Virus record (IMG/VR): IMGVR_UViG_3300030099_004448
Coordinates: 124,001 to 188,000 of that record
DNA length: 64,000 nucleotides
Strand: one strand, 5' to 3'
The position numbers and the translations under genes were made by a program. Of this stretch, positions 26,522 to 53,661 are shown in pieces; within the stretch, counting starts at the first letter, position 1; each line of letters opens with the position of its first letter. Below the pieces are notes generated by a model that worked only from the letters and a program-made list of their open reading frames with translations, made no database searches and was not told where the DNA came from.

Positions 26522-26526
26522 CTTCT

Positions 26527-26599: not shown

Positions 26600-26628
26600 T
26601 TGACAGATCCCTGTCAATCCCTTACAAT
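26600..26628 (+). promoter_or_regulatory. Sigma70-like promoter with a palindrome over the -35 box
   Basis: TTGACA-17 nt-TACAAT; TTGACAG-ATCC-CTGTCAA inverted repeat at 26600-26617. Confidence 0.7.
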
Positions 26629-33401: not shown

Positions 33402-34258
33402 TCGGGTACAACAGACTCGGAAGTAACGGACGTTTGGGAAACCAAATGTTTCAATATGCATCATTAAGAGGCATTGCAGATAAAAATGGATATGATTGGT
33501 GTATTCCTCCTGAGGAATATGATCATAAGGATAACTATGGTTTGTTTGAAACTTTCAAACTAATTAGTGTTGCGCCAAAGAATATTGGATTTGTTCAGGG
33601 TGATTATGTGCAAGAAAATGATCATTGTTTTTTAGAAGACTTTTTCAATGTTCTTCCAGACAACGTTAGTTTAGATGGATACTTTCAAACAGAAAAATAC
33701 TTCTCGCACATTAGAGAAGAAATACTCGCGGATTACACATTCAGGGACGATTTCTTCCTTCCTTGTAAACAGTATGTTGATAGTCTGGATGTGCCTCCTA
33801 TCTTCCTGCATATTCGTCAGTCTGATAACATCGGAAGAGAAGAATACCACCCCATTCTTCCCCTTACATATTATGAAGAAGCTCTGAAAGAGTTTCCTGA
33901 AGATACCCCTTGTTTTGTTCTTACAGACGATATTGAGTGGTGTAAGAAACAACCGTTCTTTGATAATGATAGATTCATGTTCAATGAGAACAATGATCGG
34001 TATCAATACCAGACTATTGATGGTCTTGGACGTATGCAGAATACTCTTCTGCCCCAGGTTGATCTCTGTCTTATGAGTCTTTGTTCTGGTGCTATCATTG
34101 CAAACTCATCATTCTCTTGGTGGGGAGCATGGTTGCAGGATGATGCGGGTAAGGTTGTTGCACCTAATCCTAAGAAGTGGTTTGGTACTGCCATGACGCA
34201 TCTAGATACCTCAGACATCGTGCCTCATCGTTGGATTATTAAAGAGTGGAGTAAGTAA
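33398..34258 (+). CDS. GT11 alpha-1,2-fucosyltransferase-like #1
   Basis: GRLGNQMFQYA, GYFQTEKYF, HIR, IIANSSFSWWGAWL. Confidence 0.92.
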   Translation: MIGYNRLGSNGRLGNQMFQYASLRGIADKNGYDWCIPPEEYDHKDNYGLFETFKLISVAPKNIGFVQGDYVQENDHCFLEDFFNVLPDNVSLDGYFQTEKYFSHIREEILADYTFRDDFFLPCKQYVDSLDVPPIFLHIRQSDNIGREEYHPILPLTYYEEALKEFPEDTPCFVLTDDIEWCKKQPFFDNDRFMFNENNDRYQYQTIDGLGRMQNTLLPQVDLCLMSLCSGAIIANSSFSWWGAWLQDDAGKVVAPNPKKWFGTAMTHLDTSDIVPHRWIIKEWSK

Positions 34259-35154
34259 TGGCTGTAACATTTAAAGGACTTGGTAACGAGGGTCGCCTTG
34301 GTAACCAAATGTTTCAATATGCCTTTGTCCGAGGTGTGGCTGCAAACCGTGGATTTGATTGGATGATCCCTGGCCCAAATGCAGATAGACTTGATAACTA
34401 TGGTTTGTTCGATGCATTTGAACTAACCAACTGCGATCTAAATAGGAACACTGGAGAACCCTTCTACAAAACAGTAGAATATAGGGATATGCACTTCAAT
34501 GAAGAAATCTATGACCGTTGCGAGGACAATACCAATTTCTCTGGTAATTTCCAAACGGAGAGATATTTTGAGACAATCGCGGCGTCTATCCGTGAGGATT
34601 TCACTTTTAAAAAGGCGTATCTGGAACCGTGCCAAGATTTTATTGATAGTCTTGGTGGACGTGATGAGTGTATCTTTTTGCACGTTCGTAGAGGTAATCC
34701 GAATCTTACTGGACGTAGAGGGGAAAAGTGGTCTTATCAGATGGTGCAAGAATACCACCCTCTCTGTAAAGCTGAATATTATGTACGGGCCCTCCAAGAG
34801 TTCCCCGAAGACAAAACAGTCATCGTCGTCTCAGACGTAATCGACTGGTGTAAGAAACAACCCTATCTTCAGGGAGATCGATTCCAATTCTCAGACTCAT
34901 CTTATGAGGTCTTTGGTGATGGTGCATCCGTTCCTTATGTTGACCTCTGTTTAATGAGTCTTTGTGGTGGTGCTATCATCGCCAACTCTTCTCTATCATG
35001 GTGGGGTGCATGGTTGCAAGGTGATACAGGAAAGGTAGTTGTACCCGATCCCTGGTTTGGACCTGCATATGACCACTACAACATGAAGGATATGATTCCA
35101 GATCGATGGGTCAAACTCCACAACGATCCATCCCCAGTTACTCCAGAACAATGA
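34258..35154 (+). CDS. GT11 alpha-1,2-fucosyltransferase-like #2
   Basis: GRLGNQMFQYA, HVRRG, IIANSSLSWWGAWL. Confidence 0.92.
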   Translation: MAVTFKGLGNEGRLGNQMFQYAFVRGVAANRGFDWMIPGPNADRLDNYGLFDAFELTNCDLNRNTGEPFYKTVEYRDMHFNEEIYDRCEDNTNFSGNFQTERYFETIAASIREDFTFKKAYLEPCQDFIDSLGGRDECIFLHVRRGNPNLTGRRGEKWSYQMVQEYHPLCKAEYYVRALQEFPEDKTVIVVSDVIDWCKKQPYLQGDRFQFSDSSYEVFGDGASVPYVDLCLMSLCGGAIIANSSLSWWGAWLQGDTGKVVVPDPWFGPAYDHYNMKDMIPDRWVKLHNDPSPVTPEQ

Positions 35155-35966
35155 AAGATTTAACATTCCTATTACCATGTCGCATTGAGTCTGAAGATCG
35201 ACTCAAAAATGTAATTACATCTACGACATATCTCCTCAAGAACTTTCCAGAAGCAAAAGTAATTCTGAAAGAAGTTGATACCAGGTCACACTTCAAGTTT
35301 CGTGCCCTACCTATCATCAAAAAGTATGTAAATACGGATCAACTCACTCACATCTTTGAGGAGAGTAATGAGAAGTTCTTTCATAAGACTCGTATCTTGA
35401 ATGATCTTTTGGTTGCTTCTGATACTTCTATCGTTTATAATCATGACGTGGATGTAGTTCTTCCCAAAGAAAGTTATGAACTCGCATACGCTGCAATTAA
35501 AAAGGGTCAATCTGATGCAGTATATCCTTTTGGTTGCGGAGTCTATCAATGGGCTGTAAACTATTCCGAATCAATTTTCAGTCAGTTCTTGGATTCTGAT
35601 TTTGATTTCAGTACACTTGATGAAGGTAAATTTAGAGTTGCTTCATCTATTGGTTGGGGTCAAATGATCAAAAGAGATACTGAGATTGAAGTTGGTATGT
35701 GGAATGAAAACTTCATCTCATGGGGTGCGGAGGATTGTGAGTTCTACTTCCGTCTGAATAGTTTTGGTCGAAAGGTGGGTAGAGTTCTTGGTGACATCTA
35801 TCACTTTGAACACGGTAGAACATTCAACTCGCACTACCATAATCCCAAGTTCATGGATAACCACAATCTATGGCAAGATATTAGAACGTGGGATGCCGAT
35901 AAACTTATTGAGTATTATCAAAAACAAGATTACAACGCAAAGAGGTTAGAAGAACTGTCATGCTAG
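35151..35966 (+). CDS. GT-A fold glycosyltransferase (GT2/GT7C-like)
   Basis: FHKTRILN, HDVD (DxD), WNENFISWGAEDCEF, YHFEH. Confidence 0.85.
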   Translation: MKDLTFLLPCRIESEDRLKNVITSTTYLLKNFPEAKVILKEVDTRSHFKFRALPIIKKYVNTDQLTHIFEESNEKFFHKTRILNDLLVASDTSIVYNHDVDVVLPKESYELAYAAIKKGQSDAVYPFGCGVYQWAVNYSESIFSQFLDSDFDFSTLDEGKFRVASSIGWGQMIKRDTEIEVGMWNENFISWGAEDCEFYFRLNSFGRKVGRVLGDIYHFEHGRTFNSHYHNPKFMDNHNLWQDIRTWDADKLIEYYQKQDYNAKRLEELSC

Positions 35967-36814
35967 CAATTAATGAGCTCGGGAACATGGGTCGTCTAGG
36001 AAACCAGATGTTCCAATATGCAGCAACGCGAGGACTTGCAGCTGCAAAGGGGTATGAATGGTGTATTCCACCTTTTACGACTCCCAGGATTGATAACTAC
36101 AGTCTTGCTAATTGTTTTACCATGGAGAGTGTTACTCCTAGTAATCAATACATCCTTGATCGTGGACATGCTCCAGTAGTTATGGAAAAACAGTTCCACT
36201 TCGATGAGGAACTGATGCAATTGTGTCCCAATGATGTTTCTTTGTATGGATTTTTCCAGACTGAGAAGTATTTTGCACACATTCGAGATGAAATTCGTAG
36301 GGACTTTACTTTCCATGAAGATCTGACGGTTCCCATCCAAGGATTCCTTAACGATCTGAAAGATCCTATCTTCTTGCATGTACGTCGTGGTGATCCCAAC
36401 CTTGTCGATGCTCGTGGATTTAAGTGGTCTTACACTCAGTGTTCTTCTATGCACCCGCCACAAGGCGTTGAGTACTACGAAGAGGCGTTGAAACAATTCC
36501 CAGACGATCAAGAGGTTGTCGTCGTCTCAGACTCGCCTGAGTGGGTTATGGAACAGGAACTATTCAAACCTGATCGTTTCTTTGTTTCTACACCCGAAGA
36601 GAAGTATCCTGATGGATCTTATACTCCTTATATTGACCTCTGTTTGATGGCGAATTGTAAGGGTGCTATCATTGCAAACTCTACTCTTTCTTGGTGGGGT
36701 GCATGGTTGCAGAATGGTGCTGGTAAAGTCATTGCACCTAAGAACTGGTTCGGTCCAGATTACGCTGATAAAGATACTAAAGATTTGTACTGTGAGGGTT
36801 GGGAAGTTATTTGA
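35960..36814 (+). CDS. GT11 alpha-1,2-fucosyltransferase-like #3
   Basis: GRLGNQMFQYA, GFFQTEKYF, HVRRGD, ANSTLSWWGAWL. Confidence 0.92.
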   Translation: MLAINELGNMGRLGNQMFQYAATRGLAAAKGYEWCIPPFTTPRIDNYSLANCFTMESVTPSNQYILDRGHAPVVMEKQFHFDEELMQLCPNDVSLYGFFQTEKYFAHIRDEIRRDFTFHEDLTVPIQGFLNDLKDPIFLHVRRGDPNLVDARGFKWSYTQCSSMHPPQGVEYYEEALKQFPDDQEVVVVSDSPEWVMEQELFKPDRFFVSTPEEKYPDGSYTPYIDLCLMANCKGAIIANSTLSWWGAWLQNGAGKVIAPKNWFGPDYADKDTKDLYCEGWEVI

Positions 36815-37605
36815 TGGATAAGAATAAGTCTGTATCTAAACTGAAAGGTATGGGACCCATCTATTACATCAACTTAGATGGGCAACCAGAACGCAAACAG
36901 TACATGGAAGACATGTTTGCACATTGGGAAATTGAAAACTACGAACGTATTTCTGCATATGATGGTAGAGAGGATGATCTAAGCGACATCCTCCACGGTC
37001 GTTATCCAGAAAATATGAGTTCTGGTGAGATTGGGTGTGTAACCTCTCACCTTAAACTCCTTAAACATTTTCTAGAGACATCTGATGCACCATACTGTGT
37101 GGTGATGGAAGATGATGTTGATATTAATGTTGCTAAGTATTGGACTTTCACTTGGAATCAACTTTATGCAAGATTCCCCTATGATTATGATGTTGTTCAG
37201 TTGGCAGTCATCTGCCCTGGTACACTTCACGTCAATCTACACAGGAGATTTGTAAACGATTTCTCCACGGCGTGTTATGTCATTACACGTCACCATGCGG
37301 AAAAGGTGGTTCGCCTCCATTGTCGGGGGGAAAAGTATAAACTAGACTATAAAATCAAGCCACGTGCTGTTGCAGACGATTTGATCTATAACTCTGGTAA
37401 TACGTTCGCCTTGCCTATATTTCTCTATAAGATTGAGTTGGGGTCCTCAATTCATCCTGAACATATTGAGATTTTCCATCGAGGATCACATGACGGTTTA
37501 CGAGAACTCTGGGAAAGACAAGGATCGACACTAGAAATTGATAGATTGATGGAGTGGGATCCGTATTTGGGACGAACGTCAGAAGGTCCTCAAAAAAATA
37601 CTTGA
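36814..37605 (+). CDS. GT25-family glycosyltransferase
   Basis: YYINLD...ERKQYM, GEIGCVTSH, VVMEDDV, STACYVIT. Confidence 0.85.
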   Translation: MDKNKSVSKLKGMGPIYYINLDGQPERKQYMEDMFAHWEIENYERISAYDGREDDLSDILHGRYPENMSSGEIGCVTSHLKLLKHFLETSDAPYCVVMEDDVDINVAKYWTFTWNQLYARFPYDYDVVQLAVICPGTLHVNLHRRFVNDFSTACYVITRHHAEKVVRLHCRGEKYKLDYKIKPRAVADDLIYNSGNTFALPIFLYKIELGSSIHPEHIEIFHRGSHDGLRELWERQGSTLEIDRLMEWDPYLGRTSEGPQKNT

Positions 37606-38576: not shown

Positions 38577-38601
38577 GAGGAGGGAAACCTCCTCATTTTT
38601 T
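38577..38601 (+). terminator. Intrinsic terminator
   Basis: GAGGAGG-GAAA-CCTCCTC followed by a T-tract. Confidence 0.75.
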
Positions 38602-38612: not shown

Positions 38613-41003
38613 ATGTTAACCAACACAATTACGGATGGAGTAAAGGAACGTCTTCTGTACACACTAGGAAAGCGTCCCGAATCTGCCTCTGCACACGATG
38701 TCTACATGGCACTTTGTTATGCCGTTAGAGATCGAATGATTGATAATCATTTAGTTGAAAAGCCATATAAGAAGGAAGTTGCATATTTGTCTGCAGAGTT
38801 CCTTATTGGACCGCAGTTGAGTAACAACTTACTCAATTTGGATATTCGCAAAGAAGCTGCTGCAGCAGTTGGTCAGTTTGGATATGATTTGGATGAGATT
38901 TTAGAATTGTCTGAAGAACCTGGACTTGGAAATGGTGGTCTAGGTAGACTTGCTGCATGTTACATGGAATCCATGGCAACTCTAAAAGTTCCTGCCACTG
39001 GATATGGTATTAGATATAAGTACGGTATTTTCAAACAAACAATCCGTGACAATCAACAGGTAGAAGTCACCGATAATTGGTTGCATGGAGATTGGCCATG
39101 GGAAGTTTGTTATCCAGATGAATCTGTCATGATCGGATTCGGGGGAAAGGTAGAACACTATGAGTTTGATGATAATGACCATAGAGTTCGTTGGGCACCT
39201 CAACAACATGTGGTTGCAGTTCCTTATGATGTTTTGCAAGCAGGATATAAAGTAGATAGTTGTGCAAAGATTAGACTCTGGAGAGCAGACGCTATTGATG
39301 TGTTTGACTTCAAAGCATTCAACCAGGGAGACTATCTGGGATCCGTAGAGAACAGTGTAACCACGGAGACTATCTCAAAAGTTCTTTATCCAAATGATGG
39401 AACCACTCAAGGAAAAGAACTGAGATTAAAACAGCAGTTCTTCTTTGTGAGTGCTTCTCTTCAGGACATGATCAGAAGTCTCAAAGAACGTGATCTACCT
39501 CTCGAAGAGTTCTACAACTATTATCAAGTTCAGTTAAATGATACTCATCCATCAGTTGCGGTTGCAGAACTAATGAGACTTCTTATGGATGATCACCACA
39601 TGGAGTGGGATCTTGCATGGGATATTACAAGTAAGTCGATTGCATATACCAATCACACACTACTTCCAGAGGCACTGGAGAAGTGGAGTGTAAGTCTGTT
39701 TGAAAAACTCCTACCCAGACACTTGGAGATCATTTATGAAATCAATTCCAGATTCCTCCAGATCGTCAGAATGCACTACCCAGGAGACGAAGAAATCCTC
39801 AGAAAACTGTCCATCATTGATGAGACGGGTGGTAGATTTGTCCGCATGGCCAATCTTGCAACAGTCGGATCTCACCATATCAATGGTGTTGCTTCACTTC
39901 ACTCAGATCTGATCACTAAGAACCTCATGCCTGAGTTCTATGACCTTTGGCCTCACAAGTTCACCAATGTAACCAATGGTGTGACTCCTCGTCGCTGGTT
40001 GGCAGACTCTAACCCTGCACTTGCTGAGGTTCTTACAAATTGCGTTGGTGATGAATGGGTTACTGATATGACTCGTCTCAGTGATCTAGAGAAGTTTGCT
40101 GATGATCCTATTGTTCTTGAAAAGATTGGTGCGACAAAACTCATTGGTAAACATAAACTGGCACAATATATACAGAAGACACTTGGCATCTCAGTTGATC
40201 CGTCAAGTATGTTTGATGTACAAGTAAAGAGGATTCATGAATACAAACGACAGCATCTCCTTGCTCTATGGATTGTGTCTCGGTATTTGTATATCAAAAA
40301 TCATAAAGACGATTATGTTGTTCCACGTACAGTAATCTTTGGTGGTAAAGCCGCACCTGGTTACTATATGGCGAAAGAGATTATTCGTTTCATTTGTAAT
40401 CTTGCGGAGACTGTCAACTCAGATCCTGATATGGATGGAAAGTTGCGTGTGGTATTCCTACCTAACTATAGTGTGAAGTTGGGTGAGAAAGTCTATCCCG
40501 CTGCGGATCTCTCTGAACAGATCTCAACCGCAGGTAAGGAAGCATCTGGTACTGGTAATATGAAGTTCCAGATGAATGGTGCTCTGACTATTGGTACACT
40601 CGATGGTGCAAATGTAGAGATTCGTGACTTGGTAGGTGAAGAGAACTTCTTCCTCTTTGGTAATACTGAAGAAGAGATCGGTGATCTATGGAAGAATGGT
40701 TATGATCCTAAAGAACACATGAGTTCTGGATTGTTTGAGTCGATTGAATTAATCAAGTCTGGTCACTTCTCGAATGGTGATAAGAATGCATTTGTTTCTA
40801 TCATTGATAATCTGCTGCAGAGTGATCCATTCTGTGTCTGTGCAGACTTTGCAGATTATTGCCGTGCCCAGAACGTTGTAGATAACACCTGGGGTAATAG
40901 AGAGGAATGGAATCGTAGATCTCTGATGAACATTGCTAGATCTGGATTCTTCTCATCCGATAGATCTATTCAAGATTACTGTGACAACATCTGGAAAATA
41001 TGA
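38613..41003 (+). CDS. glgP: Glycogen/starch/alpha-glucan phosphorylase (GT35)
   Basis: YLSAEFLIG, GLGNGGLGRLAAC, QLNDTHP, YTNHTLLPEALE, VKRIHEYKRQHL, GGKAAPGY and the PLP-lysine motif EASGTGNMKF; 796 aa, uninterrupted. Confidence 0.97.
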   Translation: MLTNTITDGVKERLLYTLGKRPESASAHDVYMALCYAVRDRMIDNHLVEKPYKKEVAYLSAEFLIGPQLSNNLLNLDIRKEAAAAVGQFGYDLDEILELSEEPGLGNGGLGRLAACYMESMATLKVPATGYGIRYKYGIFKQTIRDNQQVEVTDNWLHGDWPWEVCYPDESVMIGFGGKVEHYEFDDNDHRVRWAPQQHVVAVPYDVLQAGYKVDSCAKIRLWRADAIDVFDFKAFNQGDYLGSVENSVTTETISKVLYPNDGTTQGKELRLKQQFFFVSASLQDMIRSLKERDLPLEEFYNYYQVQLNDTHPSVAVAELMRLLMDDHHMEWDLAWDITSKSIAYTNHTLLPEALEKWSVSLFEKLLPRHLEIIYEINSRFLQIVRMHYPGDEEILRKLSIIDETGGRFVRMANLATVGSHHINGVASLHSDLITKNLMPEFYDLWPHKFTNVTNGVTPRRWLADSNPALAEVLTNCVGDEWVTDMTRLSDLEKFADDPIVLEKIGATKLIGKHKLAQYIQKTLGISVDPSSMFDVQVKRIHEYKRQHLLALWIVSRYLYIKNHKDDYVVPRTVIFGGKAAPGYYMAKEIIRFICNLAETVNSDPDMDGKLRVVFLPNYSVKLGEKVYPAADLSEQISTAGKEASGTGNMKFQMNGALTIGTLDGANVEIRDLVGEENFFLFGNTEEEIGDLWKNGYDPKEHMSSGLFESIELIKSGHFSNGDKNAFVSIIDNLLQSDPFCVCADFADYCRAQNVVDNTWGNREEWNRRSLMNIARSGFFSSDRSIQDYCDNIWKI

Positions 41004-41686
41004 ACATTTGGGTTGGGTATGACACCCGTGAACACTGGGCATTCAAGGTCTGTGATTACAGCATCCGCAAATACAGACCTGATGCAATCGTAAAACCGAT
41101 TGAACAACGAAACACAAGACTTCTTGGTCTCTACGATAGACCTATAGATGAGAATGCCTCTACTGAGTTTTCTCTAACTAGATTTCTAACGCCTGCACTA
41201 TCAAACTTTAAGGGATGGTCACTTTACTGTGATTGTGACTTTCTCTTTTTGAATGATGTTAAAAAGTTATTTGATCTTGCTGATCCTAAGTACGCTGCAA
41301 TGGTGGTCAAACATGACTATAAACCAAAGAGTAATACAAAGATGGATGGTCAAATTCAGTTTCCATATCCTAGAAAGAACTGGAGTTCTTTGATCTTATT
41401 CAATAACGAACATCCATCCCATAAGTTTTTGGATGTCAATGGTATGACTCCTGCAGAGCTGCACCAGTTTGACTGGATTGCAGACAAAGATCTGGGTGAA
41501 TTGCCTAAACGGTGGAATTGGTTGGTTGGTTATTGCACCGATGAAGACCTATGGTCTGATATTCCAGCTGCATTACATTACACAGATGGTGGACCATGGT
41601 TTGAAGAGACTAAAGACTGTGATTACTCTGGTTTGTGGAATCAATATTATGAGGAGTGTCTAGATGCAAATAAAATATATCGTTGA
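41000..41686 (+). CDS. GT8-like glycosyltransferase resembling plant CDI
   Basis: VGYDTRE, STEFSLTRFL, DCDF (DxD), VVKHDY, KMDGQ, YPRKNWSS, HYTDGGPWF. Confidence 0.85.
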   Translation: MNIWVGYDTREHWAFKVCDYSIRKYRPDAIVKPIEQRNTRLLGLYDRPIDENASTEFSLTRFLTPALSNFKGWSLYCDCDFLFLNDVKKLFDLADPKYAAMVVKHDYKPKSNTKMDGQIQFPYPRKNWSSLILFNNEHPSHKFLDVNGMTPAELHQFDWIADKDLGELPKRWNWLVGYCTDEDLWSDIPAALHYTDGGPWFEETKDCDYSGLWNQYYEECLDANKIYR

Positions 41687-42482
41687 CGAGACTGGTATAA
41701 ATTTTGAACATCCTCCAAATAGAGTCATGAGATTCAATCCTGTAATTTTGGATTCCATGTCTGAAAAAATGGTTAGAAGTAGTTATAAATCTAACTTGAA
41801 AAATATAGATATATTTTTTAATTCTGGAGCTAAAGAAAAACTTAGAACTATAACTAAACTTCCATATCAATATTTGGACTACAAGAAATATGGATGTTTC
41901 ATGTATCCATACATTGCAACAGATTTAAATATTATTGATGGGAAGGGGTATAGTAAAACCAATCCAGAGAGATGGAATCTTCAGACTGGATCAGGTAGAC
42001 TTTTTATTCAGAGTAGATACTTCCCAGAAAGTAAATATCCACTTGCTCACTTTTCCTTACAATATGGAACAGGTGGAGGTGAAGTTATTGAAGAATATGT
42101 TGAATACGTTAAGCAAACTTCTTGGTGGAAAGACAAAGATGTATCCGATATGGTAGCATTTGTAAACTTACATCCATATCCAGAACCAAAATGGAATACA
42201 AGTAAGATTGAAGTTTCTCTCAATGAACAGGAACACAGGTGGAATGAAAAAAATGTTTGGTTCATTAAACTTGTAGATTTTGTGCCTCGGAAAGATGCGG
42301 AGAAACACATGGAACCCAGGTTAAAACCTGATTATTTCTTGAATAAGATCACTCAAAACAATCTAAATAAGAGACTGCATAAAATATACGAAGAATTTGA
42401 AGGAGAAAATATAGATCTTTTGGACAAATTAATTTTAGATAATCTAGACTACGTGGAATCAATTTATGACTGGAGACTTTAA
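41664..42482 (+). CDS. Unknown paralog family, copy 1 of 6
   Basis: ITKLPYQY..FMYP..GSGRLF..YFP..YGTGGGE. Confidence 0.75.
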   Translation: MQIKYIVDETGINFEHPPNRVMRFNPVILDSMSEKMVRSSYKSNLKNIDIFFNSGAKEKLRTITKLPYQYLDYKKYGCFMYPYIATDLNIIDGKGYSKTNPERWNLQTGSGRLFIQSRYFPESKYPLAHFSLQYGTGGGEVIEEYVEYVKQTSWWKDKDVSDMVAFVNLHPYPEPKWNTSKIEVSLNEQEHRWNEKNVWFIKLVDFVPRKDAEKHMEPRLKPDYFLNKITQNNLNKRLHKIYEEFEGENIDLLDKLILDNLDYVESIYDWRL

Positions 42483-43230
42483 AATATTATGTTTTGATGA
42501 TACAACTGGGATGTCTATAGATATTCCTACCATCGTGGACTACAAGTATGAAGTCAAACCACCAACAGATCAAATGGTTCAAGACGCCTTTAAAGTCTTC
42601 ACTTCAGATGTAGATGAGTTTTTTAAGGATAATGTTTCTTTATTAGAAGAAGAGTATATCTTCAGTGAAAAATATACCTTTCCTTACGATGTATTTACAA
42701 AACTGCCATATCTTTATTATGACTTGTGTGTTAAAAAACTACCCTTCAAGTATCCTGCATATGTTTATCCCGACAGGAAAAAGAAGAGGAAAATGCTCTC
42801 GGGTTTGGGTAGAACTCTTATAACTTCTACTTTTGCTGATGATATTCCTTTGGATATCACTACACATTCTGAACAGTTTGGCACTGGTGGGGAGGAAATA
42901 ATCAGAAAATTAATTAATGATATTTCTAATAATAGATATTGGATGGGTCATGTAAAATATCCTATTGCAGTTATCTTACTTTCAAAGTATGAAAAAGATT
43001 TGTATGTAATTAAGGATTTGAGTTTTACTGATGAAAACTATATGAACTCCTATAGAAATTTTAGACCAGAACCATTCATAGAAAGATCTATGGATATGGA
43101 ACTGTGGAATAGAATTAAACACATATTGAAATCGGGTAAATACTACTTGAATTCTCGTAAATACTACACCGAGATTCTCAATGACATTGTTTTTAAGAAT
43201 TTAGATTATGTTAAAGATAAAGTACTTTGA
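42466..43230 (+). CDS. Unknown paralog family, copy 2 of 6
   Basis: FTKLPYLY..FKYP..GLGRTL..FGTGGEE..RPEPF. Confidence 0.78.
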   Translation: MTGDFKILCFDDTTGMSIDIPTIVDYKYEVKPPTDQMVQDAFKVFTSDVDEFFKDNVSLLEEEYIFSEKYTFPYDVFTKLPYLYYDLCVKKLPFKYPAYVYPDRKKKRKMLSGLGRTLITSTFADDIPLDITTHSEQFGTGGEEIIRKLINDISNNRYWMGHVKYPIAVILLSKYEKDLYVIKDLSFTDENYMNSYRNFRPEPFIERSMDMELWNRIKHILKSGKYYLNSRKYYTEILNDIVFKNLDYVKDKVL

Positions 43231-43930
43231 TGATAGTAGTGGGAAAGAATTAAAATCTACCAGACTTAAACCTCTAATGATTGCGGACTTTGAGTATGAA
43301 TCTCAAGTTAAAATATCTGAAGAGTTTCATAGTTGTGCCATAGATGACATTAACTATCATGTAAATAGAGTACTTAATGGTAATCCTAAACCTAGGATCT
43401 TCACTAAATTACCTTACCTTTATAGAGACTTCAAAGAAGATGGAATGATGCGCTTTCCTTTTTTTGAATTCTGTGATCATCCAGATATAAATGTGCGATA
43501 TGGTGTGGGATATGGTAGAGCATTAGTTGCACAGAAGTATTTTCCAGATATCAAAATAGATCACATAAAGTCATCTAAAGAGTTTGGTATAGGATCGGTT
43601 GAGATTGCAGAAAAAGCAATTAGTTTGATTAGAAATAATGTGTACTGGAAAGATAAGTCAGTTCCAGAAACTGTGATTGTAATGTTGGATAAACATAATT
43701 GGTTTTATTATCTTAAGGAGATAGGGTTTGCTTCTGACGAATATCTAGAGAGAAGAAAGAATTGGAGACCTCAAGAATTTGTAGAATCAACAATCAATGA
43801 TGAGTTGTGGAAATTACAGGAACAGATAATAAAAGAGGATCCTGACAATTGTTTTGATGAGGTTGTAAGAGGTGTGTTAAATAACCTTGATGGACTTCAA
43901 TCCAGTAATATCAAGTATTATACAAAATGA
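43208..43930 (+). CDS. Unknown paralog family, copy 3 of 6
   Basis: FTKLPYLYRD..RFP..GYGRAL..YFP..FGIGS..RPQEF. Confidence 0.78.
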   Translation: MLKIKYFDDSSGKELKSTRLKPLMIADFEYESQVKISEEFHSCAIDDINYHVNRVLNGNPKPRIFTKLPYLYRDFKEDGMMRFPFFEFCDHPDINVRYGVGYGRALVAQKYFPDIKIDHIKSSKEFGIGSVEIAEKAISLIRNNVYWKDKSVPETVIVMLDKHNWFYYLKEIGFASDEYLERRKNWRPQEFVESTINDELWKLQEQIIKEDPDNCFDEVVRGVLNNLDGLQSSNIKYYTK

Positions 43931-44781
43931 AATACGATGTAACTTACTTTAATGCTGACGATGGTCAGTTGATTGAATTTGACGATGGTCTCTTTAACTT
44001 AAACCTTGTAAAGTTTAAGTATTATAAGAATGAAAAAATTTCATCAGATAGACTTGCAACTGCATTTGATCTTTTCAAATATGATGTTAATAGGTATGTA
44101 AATGGTGGCACTGGATATAGTATGCGTGATTTTGACAACGGTAATATAGCCTTTGATACTTTCACCATACTTCCTTTTCTATATCTAACTGCAGAAAAAG
44201 GAGAACCGTTTCAATATCCCATCATGGAATCTCCGTATCAGGAGAAGTGGTTGACTTCTAATGACTATGGACTCAAACATACGCCAATGTTGTCTGGAAA
44301 TGGTAGGAGTTTAATTTTAGGTAAATATTTTCCAGAACAAACCATTGATATCGTTAGTAGTGATATATCGGAAGGTATTGGTGGCGATGACGATATGGAA
44401 GAATTTTTGGATAACTTATTTGCAAATTCATATTGGAATGGTAAAGATATATCTGATTATAAAATCATAGTTAACCTATGTTCTGTAGGCGAAAATAGTT
44501 TATTTGGTGGATTGAATGAGTTTTACGATGACTATACTTATAGAATGTTATACACTCTAAAGACAGTGGAGTTGGTTGATCATGAATACATGGAAGACTA
44601 TAAACATTACAGACCTGAAAGGTTTATAGAAAAAACTTCTAGACTAACTAACTGGAAGATCCTTAAAAATATTATTGATGAATCTACATTAGAAACTGAT
44701 GAAGACTATTGGGAGTTATTAGATAATATAGTTAATGGTTATAAAAAATATTTTGAGAGTGTTTATACTTGGAAGATATGA
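43927..44781 (+). CDS. Unknown paralog family, copy 4 of 6
   Basis: FTILPFLY..FQYP..GNGRSL..YFP..EGIGG..RPERF. Confidence 0.78.
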   Translation: MKYDVTYFNADDGQLIEFDDGLFNLNLVKFKYYKNEKISSDRLATAFDLFKYDVNRYVNGGTGYSMRDFDNGNIAFDTFTILPFLYLTAEKGEPFQYPIMESPYQEKWLTSNDYGLKHTPMLSGNGRSLILGKYFPEQTIDIVSSDISEGIGGDDDMEEFLDNLFANSYWNGKDISDYKIIVNLCSVGENSLFGGLNEFYDDYTYRMLYTLKTVELVDHEYMEDYKHYRPERFIEKTSRLTNWKILKNIIDESTLETDEDYWELLDNIVNGYKKYFESVYTWKI

Positions 44782-45506
44782 AACCTATATTATATTTTAA
44801 TGATAAGACTGGTGAGTCGTTAAATCTTGGCGATCAGTTAAAGGTAGTTGGATACAAGTATGAACACAATACTATATCTGAAAGACTATTTCAAGAATCT
44901 CTTTTCATTTTTAAGAGAGATATCACACGCTTTAAGTCTGCTCCGTTCAATCCCGCCTGGAACAAACCACATGATGATGCTTTCATAGAATTTGGAGAGG
45001 GATATTGGTTAATAACAAAGTTGATTCATCTGTATGATGCCCTCATAAAGGAAGGTAGATTTAAACAACCATTTGTTATTAATCCTAATAAGGAAAGACT
45101 TCTTTCATGTGGGCATGGTAGAACGTTGATTGGGTATAGATATTTTCCATACCTTGTTCATGATTACACTACTCATAGTAAAGAATATGGTATTGGTGGT
45201 GAAGAGTTAGTAAGAAAATATTTAAGTCTTGCTGCAAGTGCGGGTGATCTTGATAAGGAATATGTTGTGTCAATACTTCCCTTTCAGGATGTATGGCAAA
45301 TTAGGAGTGTCAACTTTGTAAGTAAAGAATACTTGTCTGAAAGATTGAAGAAACCGACAACTAGACAACTAGATCCTTTTCTAGAAAAGGTTTGTACTTT
45401 AGATGACTGGTTCGAGATAAAATCAAAGATAAAACTTGCTAAGTTAGAAACCGATGAAGATTATCTACAACTTTTGGATGATATTGTATTATGCAGAGAG
45501 AGATGA
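44778..45506 (+). CDS. Unknown paralog family, copy 5 of 6
   Basis: ITKLIHLY..GRFKQPFVI..CGHGRTL..YFP..EYGIGGEE. Confidence 0.78.
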   Translation: MKPILYFNDKTGESLNLGDQLKVVGYKYEHNTISERLFQESLFIFKRDITRFKSAPFNPAWNKPHDDAFIEFGEGYWLITKLIHLYDALIKEGRFKQPFVINPNKERLLSCGHGRTLIGYRYFPYLVHDYTTHSKEYGIGGEELVRKYLSLAASAGDLDKEYVVSILPFQDVWQIRSVNFVSKEYLSERLKKPTTRQLDPFLEKVCTLDDWFEIKSKIKLAKLETDEDYLQLLDDIVLCRER

Positions 45507-46162
45507 ATATTCTATACAATGATGCAATAACTTTTGAACCTTTGGATCCATTTGTAAAAATTTCCAAATTTAAGTATTACGATAAAACTCAAGTAACTGA
45601 TGATGATAAACATGAATCATTTGAACAATTCATTCAAGATGTCCACGATGTAAAAAGTGGAAAATATGATAGTGATAGCTTAGAGTATCCACGATCTCAC
45701 TTCACTGCCTTGCCTTTTCTTTATAGAGATATAAAAAAAAATGATGTGAAATATCCAACTTTTTATACACCAGATCCCACTTCTCCCATGAAACTAACTG
45801 GTGTGTGTAGAAAACTTGTTCTATCTCATTTCTTTCCTTATACTCTTTTGGATAGAGTTCACTATTCTGTTCAGAAGGGTGGTAATCTATATGAATTGAT
45901 AGAAAATATATCCACAAACATCTATTGGTCTACTGAAAATGTGAATTCCGCTTGTGTTCTAGCCTGTAAAGGAACAATGTATCCTGCACACACATATGTC
46001 ATGGGGGTTGAATTCAATGAACCTAATCCACATCCTCTGGGTCCTTGGAGTGGTAGAGTTTACGAAGAAGAAGACATGTGGTATGATATGAAACGTCTGA
46101 TTGTAAAGTCAGACTGTGACTATGAAAAGCTGCTCCAAAAATTAGTTTTGGATTACGCTTGA
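45503..46162 (+). CDS. Unknown paralog family, copy 6 of 6 (motif diverged: GVCR)
   Basis: FTALPFLYRD..KYP..TGVCRKL..FFP..QKGG..NIYW. Confidence 0.72.
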   Translation: MNILYNDAITFEPLDPFVKISKFKYYDKTQVTDDDKHESFEQFIQDVHDVKSGKYDSDSLEYPRSHFTALPFLYRDIKKNDVKYPTFYTPDPTSPMKLTGVCRKLVLSHFFPYTLLDRVHYSVQKGGNLYELIENISTNIYWSTENVNSACVLACKGTMYPAHTYVMGVEFNEPNPHPLGPWSGRVYEEEDMWYDMKRLIVKSDCDYEKLLQKLVLDYA

Positions 46163-46192
46163 CATGATACGGATTTCCGTATAGTATAAATA
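46159..46192 (+). promoter_or_regulatory. Overlapping early and late promoters for psbA
   Basis: TTGACA-17 nt-TAGTAT with TATAAATA at 46185-46192; the spacer holds an ATACGG-ATTT-CCGTAT inverted repeat. Confidence 0.7.
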
Positions 46193-46244
46193 GATCAACG
46201 ACGTGGGATGTAAAGTTCCGTTAAGTTGTACAACTCTCCGTAAA

Positions 46245-46335
46245 CCGAGACCTCTAGGGAGTATAAACACGTCTCTCATACCTCTGCTAAGGGTGCAGAG
46301 GAATAGTAACTCCACCATTTCCCTGATGGTCTTAC
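46245..46335 (+). ncRNA. Structured psbA leader, PhotoRC-II-like RNA motif
   Basis: Hairpins CCTCTGC/GCAGAGG and ACCAT/ATGGT with complementary loops (AGGG/CCCT); GAGAC/GTCTC stem; position matches the published cyanophage psbA leader motif. Confidence 0.65.
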
Positions 46336-46351
46336 TTTTTTGTTCAAAACA

Positions 46352-47387
46352 ATGGCTTCAACACTTTCAAGACAACAATCACAATCCTCGTGGGAAAATT
46401 TCTGCGAGTGGGTAACATCCACCAATAACCGTCTCTATGTCGGTTGGTTCGGCGTTCTGATGATTCCAACTCTGTTGGCAGCAACTATCTGCTTCATCGT
46501 CGCCTTCATCGCTGCTCCCCCTGTGGACATCGATGGCATCCGTGAACCCGTCGCTGGTTCACTCATGTATGGTAACAACATCATCTCTGGTGCGNNNNNN
46601 NNNNGCATCGCTCGACGAGTGGCTGTATAACGGTGGTCCTTTCCAACTCGTAGTCTTCCACTTCCTCATCGGCATCTATGCTTACATGGGTCGTGAGTGG
46701 GAACTTTCCTACCGTCTCGGTATGCGTCCTTGGATCTGTGTTGCATACTCTGCACCCGTTGCAGCAGCATCCGCAGTCTTCCTGGTCTATCCTTTCGGTC
46801 AAGGTTCATTCTCTGACGCAATGCCACTGGGCATCTCTGGTACGTTCAACTACATGCTTGTATTCCAGGCAGAGCACAACATCCTGATGCACCCCTTCCA
46901 CATGTTGGGAGTCGCAGGTGTCTTCGGTGGTTCACTCTTCTCCGCAATGCATGGTTCCCTCGTTACCTCTTCACTGGTTCGTGAAACCACTGAAACTGAG
47001 TCCCAAAACTACGGTTACAAGTTCGGTCAAGAAGAAGAGACCTATAACATTGTCGCCGCACACGGTTACTTTGGTCGTCTAATTTTCCAATATGCATCCT
47101 TTAACAACTCACGCTCTTTGCACTTCTTCCTCGCTGCGTGGCCTGTTATTGGAATCTGGTTCACTGCCCTTGGTGTTTCTACCATGGCATTTAATCTCAA
47201 TGGTTTCAACTTCAACCAGTCGATTCTCGACGGTCAAGGTCGTGTCCTGAACACCTGGGCAGACGTTCTCAACCGTGCAGGTCTGGGTATGGAAGTAATG
47301 CACGAGCGCAACGCTCACAACTTCCCTCTCGACCTTGCTGCAGCTGAGTCAACTCCTGTTGCACTCACCGCACCTACCGTTGGTTGA
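46352..47387 (+). CDS. psbA: Photosystem II D1 protein; interrupted by a 10-N assembly gap at 46595-46604
   Basis: [48 protein letters not shown]. About 18 conserved codons (VVPSS...WEA) fall in the gap. Confidence 0.97.
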
Positions 47388-51909: not shown

Positions 51910-52224
51910 ATGACACACCCACATCACGAACATAATACACTTTCTGCAATTCGTGGATTTCTTGAGAATATTGCTAACGAAGAGTTGACAGATGTTCCAG
52001 AAAAGATTAGAATGAGTGCAAGATATTTTTTGAAAACCTATCCATCTCAGGAAAGGTTGAACGAACTATATCAGGGTCAAACTTTTACTGATCTTGCTGC
52101 TCCTGCAGAACCAGAGAAGGCGATTCCCAACCCAAATAGGATTGTGAATGATAACCAAACTTGGGAAACACCAGGATTCAAGTGGAAGAGTGAAGTAGAG
52201 TTTAAACCCTCTCAGGGGAATTAG
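51910..52224 (+). CDS. Hypothetical protein
   Basis: 104-aa ORF; its stop lies inside the tRNA-Ala 5' end. Confidence 0.6.
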   Translation: MTHPHHEHNTLSAIRGFLENIANEELTDVPEKIRMSARYFLKTYPSQERLNELYQGQTFTDLAAPAEPEKAIPNPNRIVNDNQTWETPGFKWKSEVEFKPSQGN

Positions 52225-52287
52225 CTCAGCTGGTAGAGCGCCTGCTTTGCAAGCAGGATGTCAGCGGTTCGAGTCCGCTATTCTCCA
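52215..52287 (+). tRNA. tRNA-Ala(UGC)
   Basis: Acceptor GGGGAAT/ATTCTCC (G3-U70), anticodon loop TTTGCAA. Confidence 0.96.
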
Positions 52288-52737: not shown

Positions 52738-53018
52738 ACATAATTTTACTGTTCTCGTTTTGTGTAGTCGCCTGGTTCATTGCCTCGGATGAGTCGGTTG
52801 CCGAATTCGTGGTATTAGTGGGAGAATACATAAAGACAAAGACACGGATTTCTTGGTGGTGGATAACCAATAATCCAAGAAATCCCATTGTAAAATTCTT
52901 AATTAACAGAAGGTCTCACCGAGAGGCTGAGAAATTGCTCAAGATTATTAATGAAGAACGCAATAGTAATCCCAGTTCGATTGAACAGTCAGAGACTTCC
53001 CAAGAAAGCTCTGATTGA
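52728..53018 (+). CDS. Hypothetical membrane protein
   Basis: N-terminal TM. Confidence 0.6.
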   Translation: MELNIILLFSFCVVAWFIASDESVAEFVVLVGEYIKTKTRISWWWITNNPRNPIVKFLINRRSHREAEKLLKIINEERNSNPSSIEQSETSQESSD

Positions 53019-53661
53019 TATCGAAGGTAAAACCTTAATTCAAAGAGTAGTCGGGCAGTGTCTTAAAACAGATCTGCCTGTGTATCTTATTACAGACAGT
53101 CAAGAAATTGCTGATTCCGTGTGTCCCCGTAGGACCACGGTTCTTTTTTTAAGAGAAGAAGCATGCTCGGGAACAGAAAGAATTGCAAATGCAATTGATA
53201 TGATTCCTGCGGATGGTGTTATTAATGTTCAAGGTGATCAACCGTTCGTCGATCCTCAAGAGATCTTGGTCATGAATGAACATATGATTGCAAACAATTC
53301 AACGTATCCCGTGATCACACCATCTAAGATCTACGAGAGGGATCATCCATATGCTAAGGACCCGAACAAAGTTAAAGTTGTTTCTTCTAAGTATGGTCGT
53401 GCTCTTTACTTTAGCCGCCATGCCATCGGCGATGAGAGAGTTAGAATCCACATGGGAATTTATGGATACCGAAGATCTGCATTAGAAAGGTATCAATACA
53501 TGAAACCAACTCCTTTAGAACAAAGAGAGAGGTTGGAACAGTTGAGATTCCTTGAAAATGATATTTCTATCTACACTTATGAAACAGAAAGAGATCTGTT
53601 TTCTGTAGACACGCCACAAGACCTAGAACACGCTAGAGAGATAGCTTGGGAATACGACTAA
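52951..53661 (+). CDS. kdsB: 3-deoxy-manno-octulosonate cytidylyltransferase (CMP-Kdo synthetase)
   Basis: IPVRLNSQRLPKKAL, SGTERI, INVQGDQP, ALYFSR, LEQRERLEQLRFL, SVDTPQDL. Confidence 0.93.
   Translation: MKNAIVIPVRLNSQRLPKKALIDIEGKTLIQRVVGQCLKTDLPVYLITDSQEIADSVCPRRTTVLFLREEACSGTERIANAIDMIPADGVINVQGDQPFVDPQEILVMNEHMIANNSTYPVITPSKIYERDHPYAKDPNKVKVVSSKYGRALYFSRHAIGDERVRIHMGIYGYRRSALERYQYMKPTPLEQRERLEQLRFLENDISIYTYETERDLFSVDTPQDLEHAREIAWEYD

What the first reader, a model, noticed from the sequence alone, without database searches (positions are those of the whole stretch)
41664..46162. Tandem array of six diverged paralogs with a ParB/sulfiredoxin-like GxGR motif
Seen: six consecutive overlapping ORFs (219-284 aa) in an AT-rich stretch. 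All share an N-terminal (I/L)xY/F-xD-D-xxG, then FTxLP(Y/F)LYxD, F-x-YP, GxGRxLxxxYFP, ExGxGGxE and N-x-YW, and three have RPxxF. Copy 5 reads GRFKQPFVI...CGHGRTL, like the G-x-x-x-P-I-x-V...G-x-x-R core of ParB/Srx-fold nucleotide-binding enzymes. Copy 6 has the motif altered to GVCR. Inference: an uncharacterised phage enzyme family expanded by gene duplication. Sitting directly behind glgP and a GT8, it may be a set of NTP-using kinases or transferases with diversified substrates (glycan, protein or DNA modification), or a counter-defence accordion.
Basis: partly seen in the sequence, partly recalled or inferred. Interest (0 to 1): 0.8.

Follow-up and report, generated by a model that had tools for sequence, protein, structure and literature searches.

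The report
Phage ParB/Srx-like paralog array beside GT8
A marine cyanophage carries six diverged copies of an unannotated gene whose predicted core looks like the nucleotide-binding ParB/sulfiredoxin fold, and the array always sits directly after a small GT8-like glycosyltransferase gene, which points to an unstudied enzyme family linked to phage sugar chemistry.

Summary
Six overlapping + strand ORFs (41664-46162) are true paralogs: pairwise BLASTP reaches 1e-21 and family-HMM E-values are 1e-54 to 1e-67. Each is under purifying selection (dN/dS 0.10-0.29 against a sister phage).

The family is a sequence orphan. It has no Pfam, PHROG, NCBIfam, PADLOC or PDB sequence match. It has 77 representative clusters among 1.84 billion proteins, one cultured phage (S-SCSM2R, four copies annotated as hypothetical), and no hit in cellular genomes.

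AlphaFold gives a confident model (pLDDT 93.7). No Foldseek hit is individually significant. However, 34 of the top 50 PDB hits for the core are ParB/Srx-fold proteins (Spo0J, ParB, KorB, Noc, SbnI, SerK, sulfiredoxin, PadC). A profile comparison with a genuine ParB-domain family aligns GxGR to the ParB P-motif (z about 3.4 against shuffles). The proteins are acidic and have no recognised HTH, so they are not DNA clamps.

The new finding is that in at least seven diverged lineages the array starts immediately after a GT8-like glycosyltransferase gene. Copy number ranges from 1 to 7.

My best reading is a new, phage-restricted branch of ParB/Srx-fold NTP-binding enzymes, probably phosphotransferases working with that glycosyltransferase. 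The biochemistry is untested.

The parts
38613..41003 (+). Glycogen/carbohydrate phosphorylase (glgP-like, 796 aa). It is the first gene of the tightly packed eight-gene block and a facultative neighbour of the array.
   Evidence: Pfam PF00343, E=0, 1039 bits. It overlaps the next gene by 4 nt. A terminator-like hairpin lies just upstream at 38577-38594. The gene is absent next to the array in L004 and L020.
41000..41686 (+). GT8-like (GT-A, DxD) glycosyltransferase, 228 aa. It is the conserved partner gene immediately upstream of the array.
   Evidence: Pfam GT8 E=0.0016, below the gathering score. phrog_28018 E=9e-50. A D-C-D motif and an H-Y-T-D-G-G-P-W motif are visible in the translation. 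It lies directly before the first family copy in L003, L004, L016-L020, L012, S-SCSM2R, L029 and L031.
41664..42482 (+). Paralog 1 (272 aa). P-motif GSGR at 41988-41999. It belongs to the conserved 'first-position' subtype.
   Evidence: Family HMM E=1e-57. It forms a clade with L003_1 and L009_1 at 100/99 support. dN/dS 0.11.
42466..43230 (+). Paralog 2 (254 aa). P-motif GLGR at 42802-42813. This is the copy that was modelled.
   Evidence: HMM E=6e-67. AF2 pLDDT 93.7, pTM 0.91. dN/dS 0.13.
43208..43930 (+). Paralog 3 (240 aa). P-motif GYGR at 43508-43519.
   Evidence: HMM E=7e-62. dN/dS 0.14. The sister phage L003 carries an extra copy that is 52% identical to it.
43927..44781 (+). Paralog 4 (284 aa, pI 4.45). 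P-motif GNGR at 44296-44307.
   Evidence: HMM E=1e-62. dN/dS 0.16. pI.
44769..45506 (+). Paralog 5 (245 aa from the TTG, more likely 242 aa from the ATG at 44778). P-motif GHGR at 45111-45122.
   Evidence: HMM E=5e-57. ATGA overlap with the stop of copy 4. dN/dS 0.10.
45491..46162 (+). Paralog 6 (223 aa, or 219 aa from the ATG at 45503). Motif GVCR at 45800-45811. It belongs to the fast-evolving 'last-position' subtype.
   Evidence: HMM E=1e-54. It forms a clade with L003_7 (GKCR) and L009_3 (GVGR), so the Arg is kept. It is only 53% identical to its ortholog in the sister phage, with dN/dS 0.29.

Best explanation
The six genes encode a previously unrecognised, marine-phage-restricted family of acidic, soluble proteins of about 220-290 aa. 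Their central 100 residues adopt a ParB/sulfiredoxin-type nucleotide-binding fold. In this reading the near-invariant G-x-G-R at a strand-to-helix junction grips the phosphates of an NTP. The conserved T-K on the preceding helix, the invariant Pro and a conserved Asp on the next strand would help. They have no recognised HTH or ParA/parS partners, so they would work like the enzymatic branch of the superfamily (SerK/SbnI serine kinases, sulfiredoxin) and transfer a phosphoryl group from an NTP to a substrate. The array is co-transcribed and translationally coupled with a GT8-like glycosyltransferase. It lies at the end of a large glycan-biosynthesis island. The most likely substrates are therefore sugars, sugar-phosphates or a growing glycan made or modified by that transferase. 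Ancient duplication would have given each paralog its own substrate or target through the variable loops next to the P-motif. Shown: paralogy, purifying selection, the confident fold model, the position and conservation of the motif, and the conserved gene linkage. Inferred: ParB/Srx homology (convergent but sub-threshold evidence), NTP binding, phosphotransfer and a glycan substrate.
For: Paralogy is shown. Selection: dN/dS is 0.10-0.16 for copies 1-5 and 0.29 for copy 6. AF2 on the full length gives pLDDT 93.7 and pTM 0.91, with GxGR between strand 110-112 and helix 114-123. In the full-length Foldseek search, Noc, ParB, KorB, BrxU, SbnI and SerK are among the top PDB hits. About ten 'ParB/Sulfiredoxin' proteins appear in the top 34 BFVD hits. 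With the core-domain model, 34 of the top 50 PDB hits are ParB/Srx-fold proteins from at least 9 different proteins. The best local fit is SbnI-ADP 6nr6: prob 0.69, TMq 0.47, rmsd 3.1 A over 60 columns. hhalign of the core against the YbdM/IbrB family (PF02195) aligns F-x-x-P-I with T-Q-P-I-V-V and G-x-G-R with D-G-F-H-R, P=0.015. The score is 18.4 against 11.3 +/- 2.1 for 200 column shuffles, and only 1 shuffle reached it. Conservation: K79 89%, P97 98%, G113 94%, G115 86%, R116 92%, D130 78%. pI is 4.5-7.0 for all 28 copies examined. The GT8-like gene is immediately upstream in the window, L003, L004, L016-L020, L012, S-SCSM2R (ORF261 followed by ORF262/263), L029 and L031, with GT8-like identity from 51 to 93%. 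The surrounding glycan island contains GDP-mannose dehydratase, epimerase, GT10, FkbM, UDP-Glc dehydrogenase, three GT11, GT2 and GT25. Gene overlaps of 4-23 nt and the lack of an internal terminator are shown.
Against: No Foldseek hit reaches E<=0.001; the best is 0.11-0.35, and TM-scores stay below 0.5. hhalign probability is only 1.6-2.9%. No member matches PF02195 or any other Pfam, PHROG, NCBIfam or PADLOC model, even at E<=1-10. ParB Box I and Box III equivalents were not identified. The ParB-like core is central, not N-terminal as in SerK/SbnI. No catalytic base can be assigned without coordinates. Some copies occur away from the GT8-like gene: S-SCSM2R ORF40 follows an aminotransferase and a radical-SAM/SPASM gene, and ORF268 lies between 2OG-Fe(II) oxygenases. 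The GT8-like gene exists without the family in a pelagiphage and in Caulobacter phages. The array's lower GC suggests a separate origin from its neighbours. Transcription was not demonstrated.
Confidence: 0.45

Rival explanations
1. NTP-gated binding proteins rather than enzymes. Each paralog would use nucleotide binding at GxGR as a switch, as ParB-CTPase-fold proteins do, to bind and inhibit or redirect a different host protein. This would be a host-takeover or counter-defence set whose diversity tracks host diversity.
For: The family is phage-only, at least in the collections searched. Copy number ranges from 1 to 7 between relatives, including gain or loss of one copy between sister phages. 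The loops next to the motif vary in length. The terminal copy diverges fast, at 53% identity where its neighbours are 84-91% identical, with dN/dS 0.29. One copy elsewhere has lost the motif (L012_5, GSKE). A published survey found that orphan ParB-fold proteins on mobile elements bind ATP, CTP or GTP and suggested anti-defence roles (PMC12704722).
Against: dN/dS of 0.10-0.16 is low. Orthologous subtypes with conserved first and last positions are shared by phages whose copies are only about 30-45% identical. This points to long-term stable functions, not an arms-race accordion. The strict linkage to a glycosyltransferase gene is not explained by this model. There is no PADLOC-related signal.
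Confidence: 0.2
2. The resemblance to ParB/Srx is superficial. The family would have its own alpha/beta fold and another role, such as a non-catalytic accessory or specificity subunit, or an acceptor protein, for the GT8-like transferase. GxGR would then be structural or bind a sugar-nucleotide.
For: Every structural and profile match is below conventional significance. Keap1-BTB and NTF2-like proteins also appear in the hit list. Box I and Box III are absent. The obligate adjacency and translational coupling to the GT8-like gene fit a subunit relationship. Several aromatic residues (Tyr/Phe) are highly conserved.
Against: ParB/Srx proteins dominate the hit lists of two libraries and two models, with 34 of 50 from many unrelated entries. 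This is very unlikely for a fold that makes up a tiny share of the PDB. hhalign independently picks the expected register and beats 199 of 200 shuffles. A Gly-x-Gly-Arg at a strand-to-helix N-cap is a typical phosphate-binding arrangement.
Confidence: 0.2
3. Nucleic-acid modification helpers. Like the ParB-like proteins DndB or DpdB, the paralogs would be NTPases that assist enzymes modifying phage DNA or RNA, for example glycosylation of bases by the GT8-like enzyme.
For: In S-SCSM2R-type phages, single copies sit with a PLP aminotransferase, a radical-SAM/SPASM enzyme, 2OG-Fe(II) oxygenases and a gene annotated 'ParB-like CTPase'. The S-SCSM2R authors speculate that its many glycosyltransferases might glucosylate DNA (PMC12801897).
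Against: All copies are acidic and have no recognisable DNA-binding domain. The surrounding genes are classic polysaccharide or LPS-type enzymes: GDP-fucose pathway, GT10/GT11 fucosyltransferases, GT25 and KdsA/KdsB in S-SCSM2R. hhalign found no similarity to the annotated 112-aa 'ParB-like CTPase'.
Confidence: 0.1

Closest known systems
SbnI / SerK free L-serine kinases (ParB/Srx-fold small-molecule kinases; PDB 6nr6, 5ujd, 5x0g)
   Same: They are similar in size (about 240-254 aa), soluble, and lack an HTH. They give the best local structural fit of the predicted core: rmsd 3.1-3.3 A over about 60 residues, Foldseek prob 0.5-0.69, TMq 0.45-0.47. Both have an NTP-phosphate-binding G-x-x-R type motif after a beta-strand.
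   Different: There is no detectable sequence similarity. Here the ParB-like core is central, flanked by an N-terminal beta/helical segment and a C-terminal hairpin plus helical bundle. The catalytic acidic residues cannot be matched. The genomic context here is glycan genes rather than siderophore or cysteine biosynthesis. Tandem arrays are not known for SerK/SbnI.
Orphan ParB-CTPase-fold proteins of mobile elements and phages (survey of PF02195 domains, PMC12704722)
   Same: Both have a divergent P-motif (GxxR). Both are encoded on phages without parA. Nucleotide specificity cannot be predicted from sequence. The standard test is NTP binding with an R-to-A control.
   Different: That survey started from PF02195. 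None of the 65 members examined here matches PF02195 even at E<=10, so this family lies outside the surveyed space. No Box I or Box III was recognised. The proteins are acidic and arranged as tandem paralog arrays tied to a glycosyltransferase gene.
Sulfiredoxin (Srx; PDB 1xw3, 3hy2, 7lj1)
   Same: It shares the compact ParB/Srx core, and many Srx chains appear in the core model's hit list. ATP phosphates are bound at a Gly-rich motif ending in Arg. Srx occurs in cyanobacteria (stated in PMC12704722).
   Different: The Srx signature F-G-G-C-H-R with its catalytic Cys is not present. Only copy 6 has a Cys (G-V-C-R), at a different position. The proteins here are more than twice as long.
LPS-core operons that pair GT8 glycosyltransferases with sugar kinases (WaaO/WaaJ-type GT8 with WaaP/WaaY). 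This is a functional analogy recalled from general knowledge and was not tested here.
   Same: A retaining GT8-type transferase is encoded next to NTP-using enzymes within a polysaccharide gene cluster.
   Different: WaaP and WaaY are protein-kinase-like folds, not ParB/Srx. The analogy rests only on gene neighbourhood.

Membership tests
ParB/Srx (ParB-CTPase fold) superfamily | Significant match to the ParB N-terminal domain profile (Pfam PF02195) or another curated ParB/Srx model | tested here: not met
   The six copies have no Pfam hit at E<=1. None of the 65 members hits PF02195 at E<=10. NCBIfam, PADLOC and PHROGs give nothing.
ParB/Srx (ParB-CTPase fold) superfamily | Core topology: helix, strand (P-I-x-V), strand, P-motif, helix, strand, superposable on solved ParB/Srx structures | tested here: inconclusive
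   The order of secondary-structure elements matches. 34 of the top 50 PDB hits for the core are ParB/Srx proteins, but all have E>=0.35 and TMq<=0.47. The same enrichment appears for the full-length model in PDB and BFVD.
ParB/Srx (ParB-CTPase fold) superfamily | P-motif (Box II) G-x-x-R at the strand-to-helix junction with a conserved Arg | tested here: met
   G113 is 94% conserved, G115 86% and R116 92% (Lys in 4 further members) across 65 members. The motif lies between strand 110-112 and helix 114-123. hhalign aligns it with D-G-F-H-R of YbdM, P=0.015, beating 199 of 200 shuffles.
ParB/Srx (ParB-CTPase fold) superfamily | Box I (C-motif) and Box III (second P-motif) | tested here: not met
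   The hhalign alignment to YbdM shows no conserved counterpart beyond the Box II region. The family's own conserved N-terminal Y-x-D-D-x-x-G and the Gly-rich E-x-G-x-G-G-x-E loop might substitute, but this could not be checked without model coordinates.
ParB/Srx (ParB-CTPase fold) superfamily | Binds an NTP, and binding is lost in the P-motif Arg-to-Ala mutant | not testable with these tools
   This needs purified protein. The DRaCALA design is described in PMC12704722.
Canonical ParB/Noc/KorB DNA-sliding clamps | HTH DNA-binding domain, C-terminal dimerisation domain, basic character, and parA/parS partners | tested here: not met
   No HTH or ParB C-terminal Pfam domains were found. pI is 4.5-7.0. 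The neighbours are glycan genes and psbA, with no parA.
SerK/SbnI serine kinases | Sequence homology and the N-terminal ParB/Srx domain plus C-terminal helical domain architecture | tested here: inconclusive
   There is no sequence match to any PDB chain. These proteins give the best local structural fit and are similar in length, but the core is central rather than N-terminal.
Sulfiredoxin | F-G-G-C-H-R motif with a catalytic cysteine, about 100-140 aa single domain | tested here: not met
   The motif is G-x-G-R without the Cys. Copy 6 has G-V-C-R with the Cys in a different position. Lengths are 219-284 aa.
GT8 glycosyltransferases (for the partner gene at 41000-41686) | Pfam PF01501 above the gathering score, and a DxD motif | tested here: inconclusive
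   PF01501 scores E=0.0016, 18.5 bits, against a cut-off of 24.3. D-C-D and H-x-x-x-G-G-P-W motifs are present in the translation. There is no PDB sequence match. Other phage records annotate homologs as nucleotide-diphospho-sugar transferase.

The most novel reading that the evidence does not exclude
The GT8-like transferase and its ParB/Srx-like paralogs form a new two-component phage glycan-modification module. In it, a fold so far known for CTP switches and for serine or sulfinic-acid phosphorylation has been recruited to phosphorylate or otherwise activate sugars or glycans. One possibility is feeding on glucose-1-phosphate released by the adjacent phage glycogen phosphorylase. Each paralog would supply a different substrate specificity, so a single array could generate a repertoire of modified surface or virion glycans.
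Probability: 0.2. Interest if true: 0.8.

Novelty: new variant of a known kind. Interest (0 to 1): 0.55.

Why it matters
The ParB/Srx (ParB-CTPase) fold has only recently been recognised as a versatile NTP module. The latest survey was seeded with PF02195, which does not detect this family. That suggests the fold's diversity in marine viruses is underestimated.

The family is abundant in the ocean. The same array is present in 16 or more marine metagenome runs from several studies. It is maintained in up to seven selected copies. It is invariably wired to a glycosyltransferase inside the largest glycan-gene islands known in cyanophages. Its function probably bears on how cyanophages remodel host envelope or virion sugars, which affects adsorption, superinfection exclusion and host range.

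A cultured phage, S-SCSM2R on Synechococcus WH7803, carries four unannotated members. The hypothesis can therefore be tested directly.

Tried and rejected
- Sequence libraries: Pfam, PHROGs, NCBIfam and PADLOC (single proteins and all 65 members, up to E=10) and PDB sequences (profiles A1 and A2) gave only scattered one-off noise.
- ESM Atlas feature search on two members gave no usable lead and held no stored models.
- hhalign against the 112-aa S-SCSM2R-type 'ParB-like CTPase' found nothing.
- P1 ParB was fetched as a reference, but its N-domain is not itself recognised by PF02195, so it was dropped.
- A glycosyltransferase or nucleotidyltransferase identity for the six was considered and rejected, because no GT-A, GT-B or NTP-transferase structure appears in any Foldseek list.
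- Domain fusions were sought for functional hints. P0078 (354 aa) has an unannotated N-terminal extension. P0008 pairs a short stretch (28% of copy 2, 77% identical) with the C-terminal part of a GDP-mannose dehydratase domain. Neither is informative.
- Expression: runs labelled RNA contain a 90-97% identical variant covering copies 1-5, but their source is 'METAGENOMIC' and DNA cannot be excluded. A true metatranscriptome from a sample holding the phage showed nothing.
- Family members were looked for next to GT8-like homologs in pelagiphage Mosig and Caulobacter phage CcrBL9, and none was found.
- The pattern scan of 185,579 species genomes found no cellular homolog. It is limited to two peptide patterns.
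- No promoter-like site stands out within the array, and the count equals that of shuffles.

Full report
**What is there.** The window is part of a large T4-like cyanomyovirus. It carries psbA, psbD, plastocyanin and ferredoxin genes. The psbA leader is about 90% identical to that of Synechococcus phage S-SCSM1. The same DNA is held as a 239-kb IMG/VR contig.

Between 41664 and 46162, six + strand ORFs of 272, 254, 240, 284, 245 and 223 aa follow one another with 4-23 nt overlaps. For copies 5 and 6, internal ATGs at 44778 and 45503 form ATGA stop/start overlaps and are the likelier starts.

The copies are 20-30% identical. BLASTP E-values reach 9e-21, and only the pairs involving copy 6 are weak. 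The array is markedly AT-rich: GC 31-34% and GC3 about 26%. The two genes upstream have GC 39-41% and GC3 35%.

**A sequence orphan under selection.** None of the six, and none of 65 full-length relatives, matches any Pfam, PHROG, NCBIfam or PADLOC model or any PDB sequence.

An exhaustive HMMER profile search of 1.84 billion cluster representatives found only 77 clusters, all 60-354 aa. Among 50,697 phage records, only Synechococcus phage S-SCSM2R has homologs. There I found four: ORF40, ORF262, ORF263 and ORF268, all annotated as hypothetical. A pattern scan of one genome per 185,579 prokaryotic species confirmed no relative.

The region is present almost word for word in 16 or more marine metagenome runs from at least five studies.

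Against the sister phage L003, copies 1-5 are 84-91% identical with dN/dS 0.10-0.16. Copy 6 is only 53% identical to its ortholog, with dN/dS 0.29. All six are therefore maintained genes.

**Array evolution.** Copy number varies:
- 6 in the window, L016 and L020;
- 7 in L003, L017 and L018, through an extra copy related to copy 3;
- 5 in L004 and L012;
- at least 3 in L009;
- 3 in L031;
- 1 to 4 elsewhere.

A maximum-likelihood tree groups the first copy with the first copies of L003 and L009. It groups the last copy with the last copies of the same loci, with 100/99 support. The duplications therefore predate the divergence of phages whose orthologs are now only 30-45% identical, and gene order has been kept. 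This is not the pattern of a rapidly cycling accordion.

In the last-position subtype the motif reads GVCR, GKCR or GVGR, so the arginine is retained. One distant copy (L012_5) has lost the motif.

**Fold.** AlphaFold2 on copy 2 with the 65-sequence alignment gives pLDDT 93.7 and pTM 0.91. The centre of the protein runs:
- helix 75-89, carrying T-K-L-P-Y-L-Y-x-D;
- invariant P97 and strand 98-100;
- strand 110-112;
- G113-x-G115-R116 at the N-cap of helix 114-123;
- Y-F-P, then strand 129-134 with D130;
- a Gly-rich loop and helix 143-154.

This is the order of elements of the ParB/Srx core.

Foldseek found no hit at E<=0.001 in PDB or BFVD. However, the weak hits are strikingly one-sided. For the full-length model they include Noc, ParB, KorB, BrxU, SbnI and SerK in PDB. 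About ten proteins named ParB or ParB/Sulfiredoxin are in the first 34 BFVD hits.

I then modelled the core alone (residues 68-166, pLDDT 85.8). Of its top 50 PDB hits, 34 are ParB/Srx-fold chains. They come from Thermus Spo0J, Myxococcus ParB, Helicobacter Spo0J, KorB, Noc, PadC, SbnI (two species), SerK and human sulfiredoxin. The best local fit is SbnI-ADP: prob 0.69, TMq 0.47, rmsd 3.1 A over 60 columns.

As an independent test, I built an alignment of E. coli YbdM/IbrB-like proteins, which carry PF02195, and compared profiles. The single reported alignment has the expected register: F-x-x-P-I on T-Q-P-I-V-V and G-x-G-R on D-G-F-H-R. P is 0.03 for the full length and 0.015 for the core, with probability only 1.6-2.9%. 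Against 200 column-shuffled versions of the ParB alignment, the real score (18.4) exceeded the mean (11.3 +/- 2.1) by 3.4 sd and was reached once.

Taken together, I rate a ParB/Srx-type core as likely, at about 0.7. It is not proven. Box I and Box III were not recognised.

**What kind of ParB/Srx protein.** All 28 copies examined are acidic to neutral, with pI 4.45-7.02. No HTH or ParB C-terminal domain was detected, and there is no parA. The DNA-clamp branch is therefore excluded. Size, solubility and the best structural neighbours point to the enzymatic branch (SerK/SbnI kinases, Srx). In that branch the fold binds ATP and transfers the gamma-phosphate. This background comes from PMC12704722.

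That survey defined the fold's diversity starting from PF02195 and used the GxxR Arg-to-Ala mutant as the binding control. This family is invisible to PF02195 and so was outside its scope.

**Context, the new observation.** The array ends a 20-kb glycan island containing:
- two radical-SAM/SPASM genes;
- GDP-mannose 4,6-dehydratase and an epimerase;
- GT10, an FkbM methyltransferase, NAD synthase and UDP-glucose dehydrogenase;
- three GT11, plus GT2 and GT25.

After a terminator-like hairpin at 38577-38594 come a glycogen phosphorylase, a 228-aa GT8-like gene and the six paralogs. All overlap or abut, with no convincing internal terminator. A PhotoRC-II RNA and psbA follow.

Across related loci the phosphorylase is dispensable: it is absent in L004 and L020. 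The GT8-like gene, in contrast, lies immediately before the first family copy in every locus with enough flank. These are L003, L004, L016-L020, the distant L012 (only its C-terminal fragment is on the contig), S-SCSM2R (ORF260 phosphorylase, ORF261 GT8-like, ORF262/263 family), L029 and L031. GT8-like identities range from 93% down to 51%.

The GT8-like gene also occurs without the family in a pelagiphage and in Caulobacter phages. Some family copies sit elsewhere: S-SCSM2R ORF40 follows an aminotransferase and a radical-SAM/SPASM gene, and ORF268 lies between 2OG-Fe(II) oxygenases. The link is therefore strong but not absolute.

**Mechanism proposed.** The proteins are NTP-binding, probably phosphotransferring, ParB/Srx-fold enzymes. 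They act in the pathway of the GT8-like transferase, and the paralogs have diverged in substrate or target. The most variable segments are the 9-30-residue loop between P97 and GxGR and an insertion after the beta-hairpin.

The rivals are:
- nucleotide-gated binders of host proteins;
- a non-ParB accessory or acceptor subunit of the transferase;
- helpers of nucleic-acid modification.

None is excluded. The evidence for and against each is listed in the corresponding fields.

**Limits.** Model coordinates could not be inspected, so pocket geometry, the role of the N-terminal Y-x-D-D-x-x-G motif and possible Box I/III substitutes remain untested. Transcription is unproven. Runs labelled RNA hold a 90-97% identical variant spanning copies 1-5 but may contain DNA, and one genuine metatranscriptome was empty. 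The 'GT8' label of the partner rests on a sub-threshold Pfam hit plus DxD-type motifs.

**Verdict.** This is a real, conserved, selected paralog array. The family is a new, sequence-orphan variant of a known fold class with a previously unnoticed, conserved partnership with a glycosyltransferase. The function is still to be shown.

Noticed in passing
window 46221-46314 (+): A PhotoRC-II cis-regulatory RNA motif (Rfam RF01717, 73.3 bits, E=2e-11) lies between the end of paralog 6 and psbA. A TTGACA-17-TAGTAT promoter-like site (46159-46187) and a T4-late-like TATAAATA (46185) sit just before it.
   Followed up: partly
window 38613-41003 (+): A full-length glycogen/carbohydrate phosphorylase (PF00343, 1039 bits) is encoded in a cyanophage. 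S-SCSM2R has the same gene, ORF260. A literature search for 'cyanophage' plus 'glycogen phosphorylase' found no paper describing one as a phage auxiliary metabolic gene.
   Followed up: partly
window 23585-24889 and 25047-26327 (+): Two paralogous proteins of about 430 aa have the SPASM iron-sulfur domain N-terminal to the radical-SAM domain, the reverse of the usual order. They sit among tRNA genes at the start of the glycan island.
   Followed up: no
window 27352-37605 (+): A dense glycan-biosynthesis island: GDP-mannose 4,6-dehydratase, NAD-dependent epimerase, GT10 fucosyltransferase-like, FkbM methyltransferase, NAD synthase, UDP-glucose dehydrogenase, three GT11, one GT2 and one GT25. 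A KdsB-like cytidylyltransferase lies further on at 52951-53661.
   Followed up: partly
window 18719-26600 and 52215-52287: Eight tRNA genes: Arg-TCT, Asn-GTT, Leu-TAG, Gly-TCC, Val-TAC, Pro-TGG, Met-CAT and Ala-TGC.
   Followed up: no
window 46595-46604: A run of 10 N inside psbA splits the gene into two listed ORFs (46340-46630 and 46533-47387). This is a masking artefact, not a broken gene.
   Followed up: yes
window 41664-46162 against 38613-41686: The paralog array has clearly lower GC (31-34%, GC3 about 26%) than the phosphorylase and GT8-like genes it is fused to (39-41%, GC3 about 35%). This suggests a different evolutionary origin or different codon-usage constraints despite the conserved linkage.
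   Followed up: partly
L026 (S-SCSM2R 203814-216467) and L001: The cultured phage S-SCSM2R encodes four members of the family (ORF40, ORF262, ORF263, ORF268), all annotated 'hypothetical protein'. ORF262/263 follow the phosphorylase and GT8-like pair and precede kdsB/kdsA.
   Followed up: yes
L031 5040-8804: In another cyanophage lineage the module reads GT8-like, a 331-aa family member, a GNAT acetyltransferase and two family members. It is followed by a C39-like peptidase and a lysozyme before psbA.
   Followed up: partly
window 45700-46200: Environmental variants 90-97% identical over copies 1-5 give no coverage over most of copy 6. This is consistent with the much faster divergence or replacement of the last-position copy. 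The same variants have a 9-nt in-frame insertion after 41837 in copy 1.
   Followed up: partly
L004 12668-14137 (-) and L031 2320-3789 (+): Related phages carry an OprB-type carbohydrate-selective porin with an SLH domain (about 489 aa) between the glycosyltransferase island and the paralog array. This is an unusual phage cargo gene.
   Followed up: no
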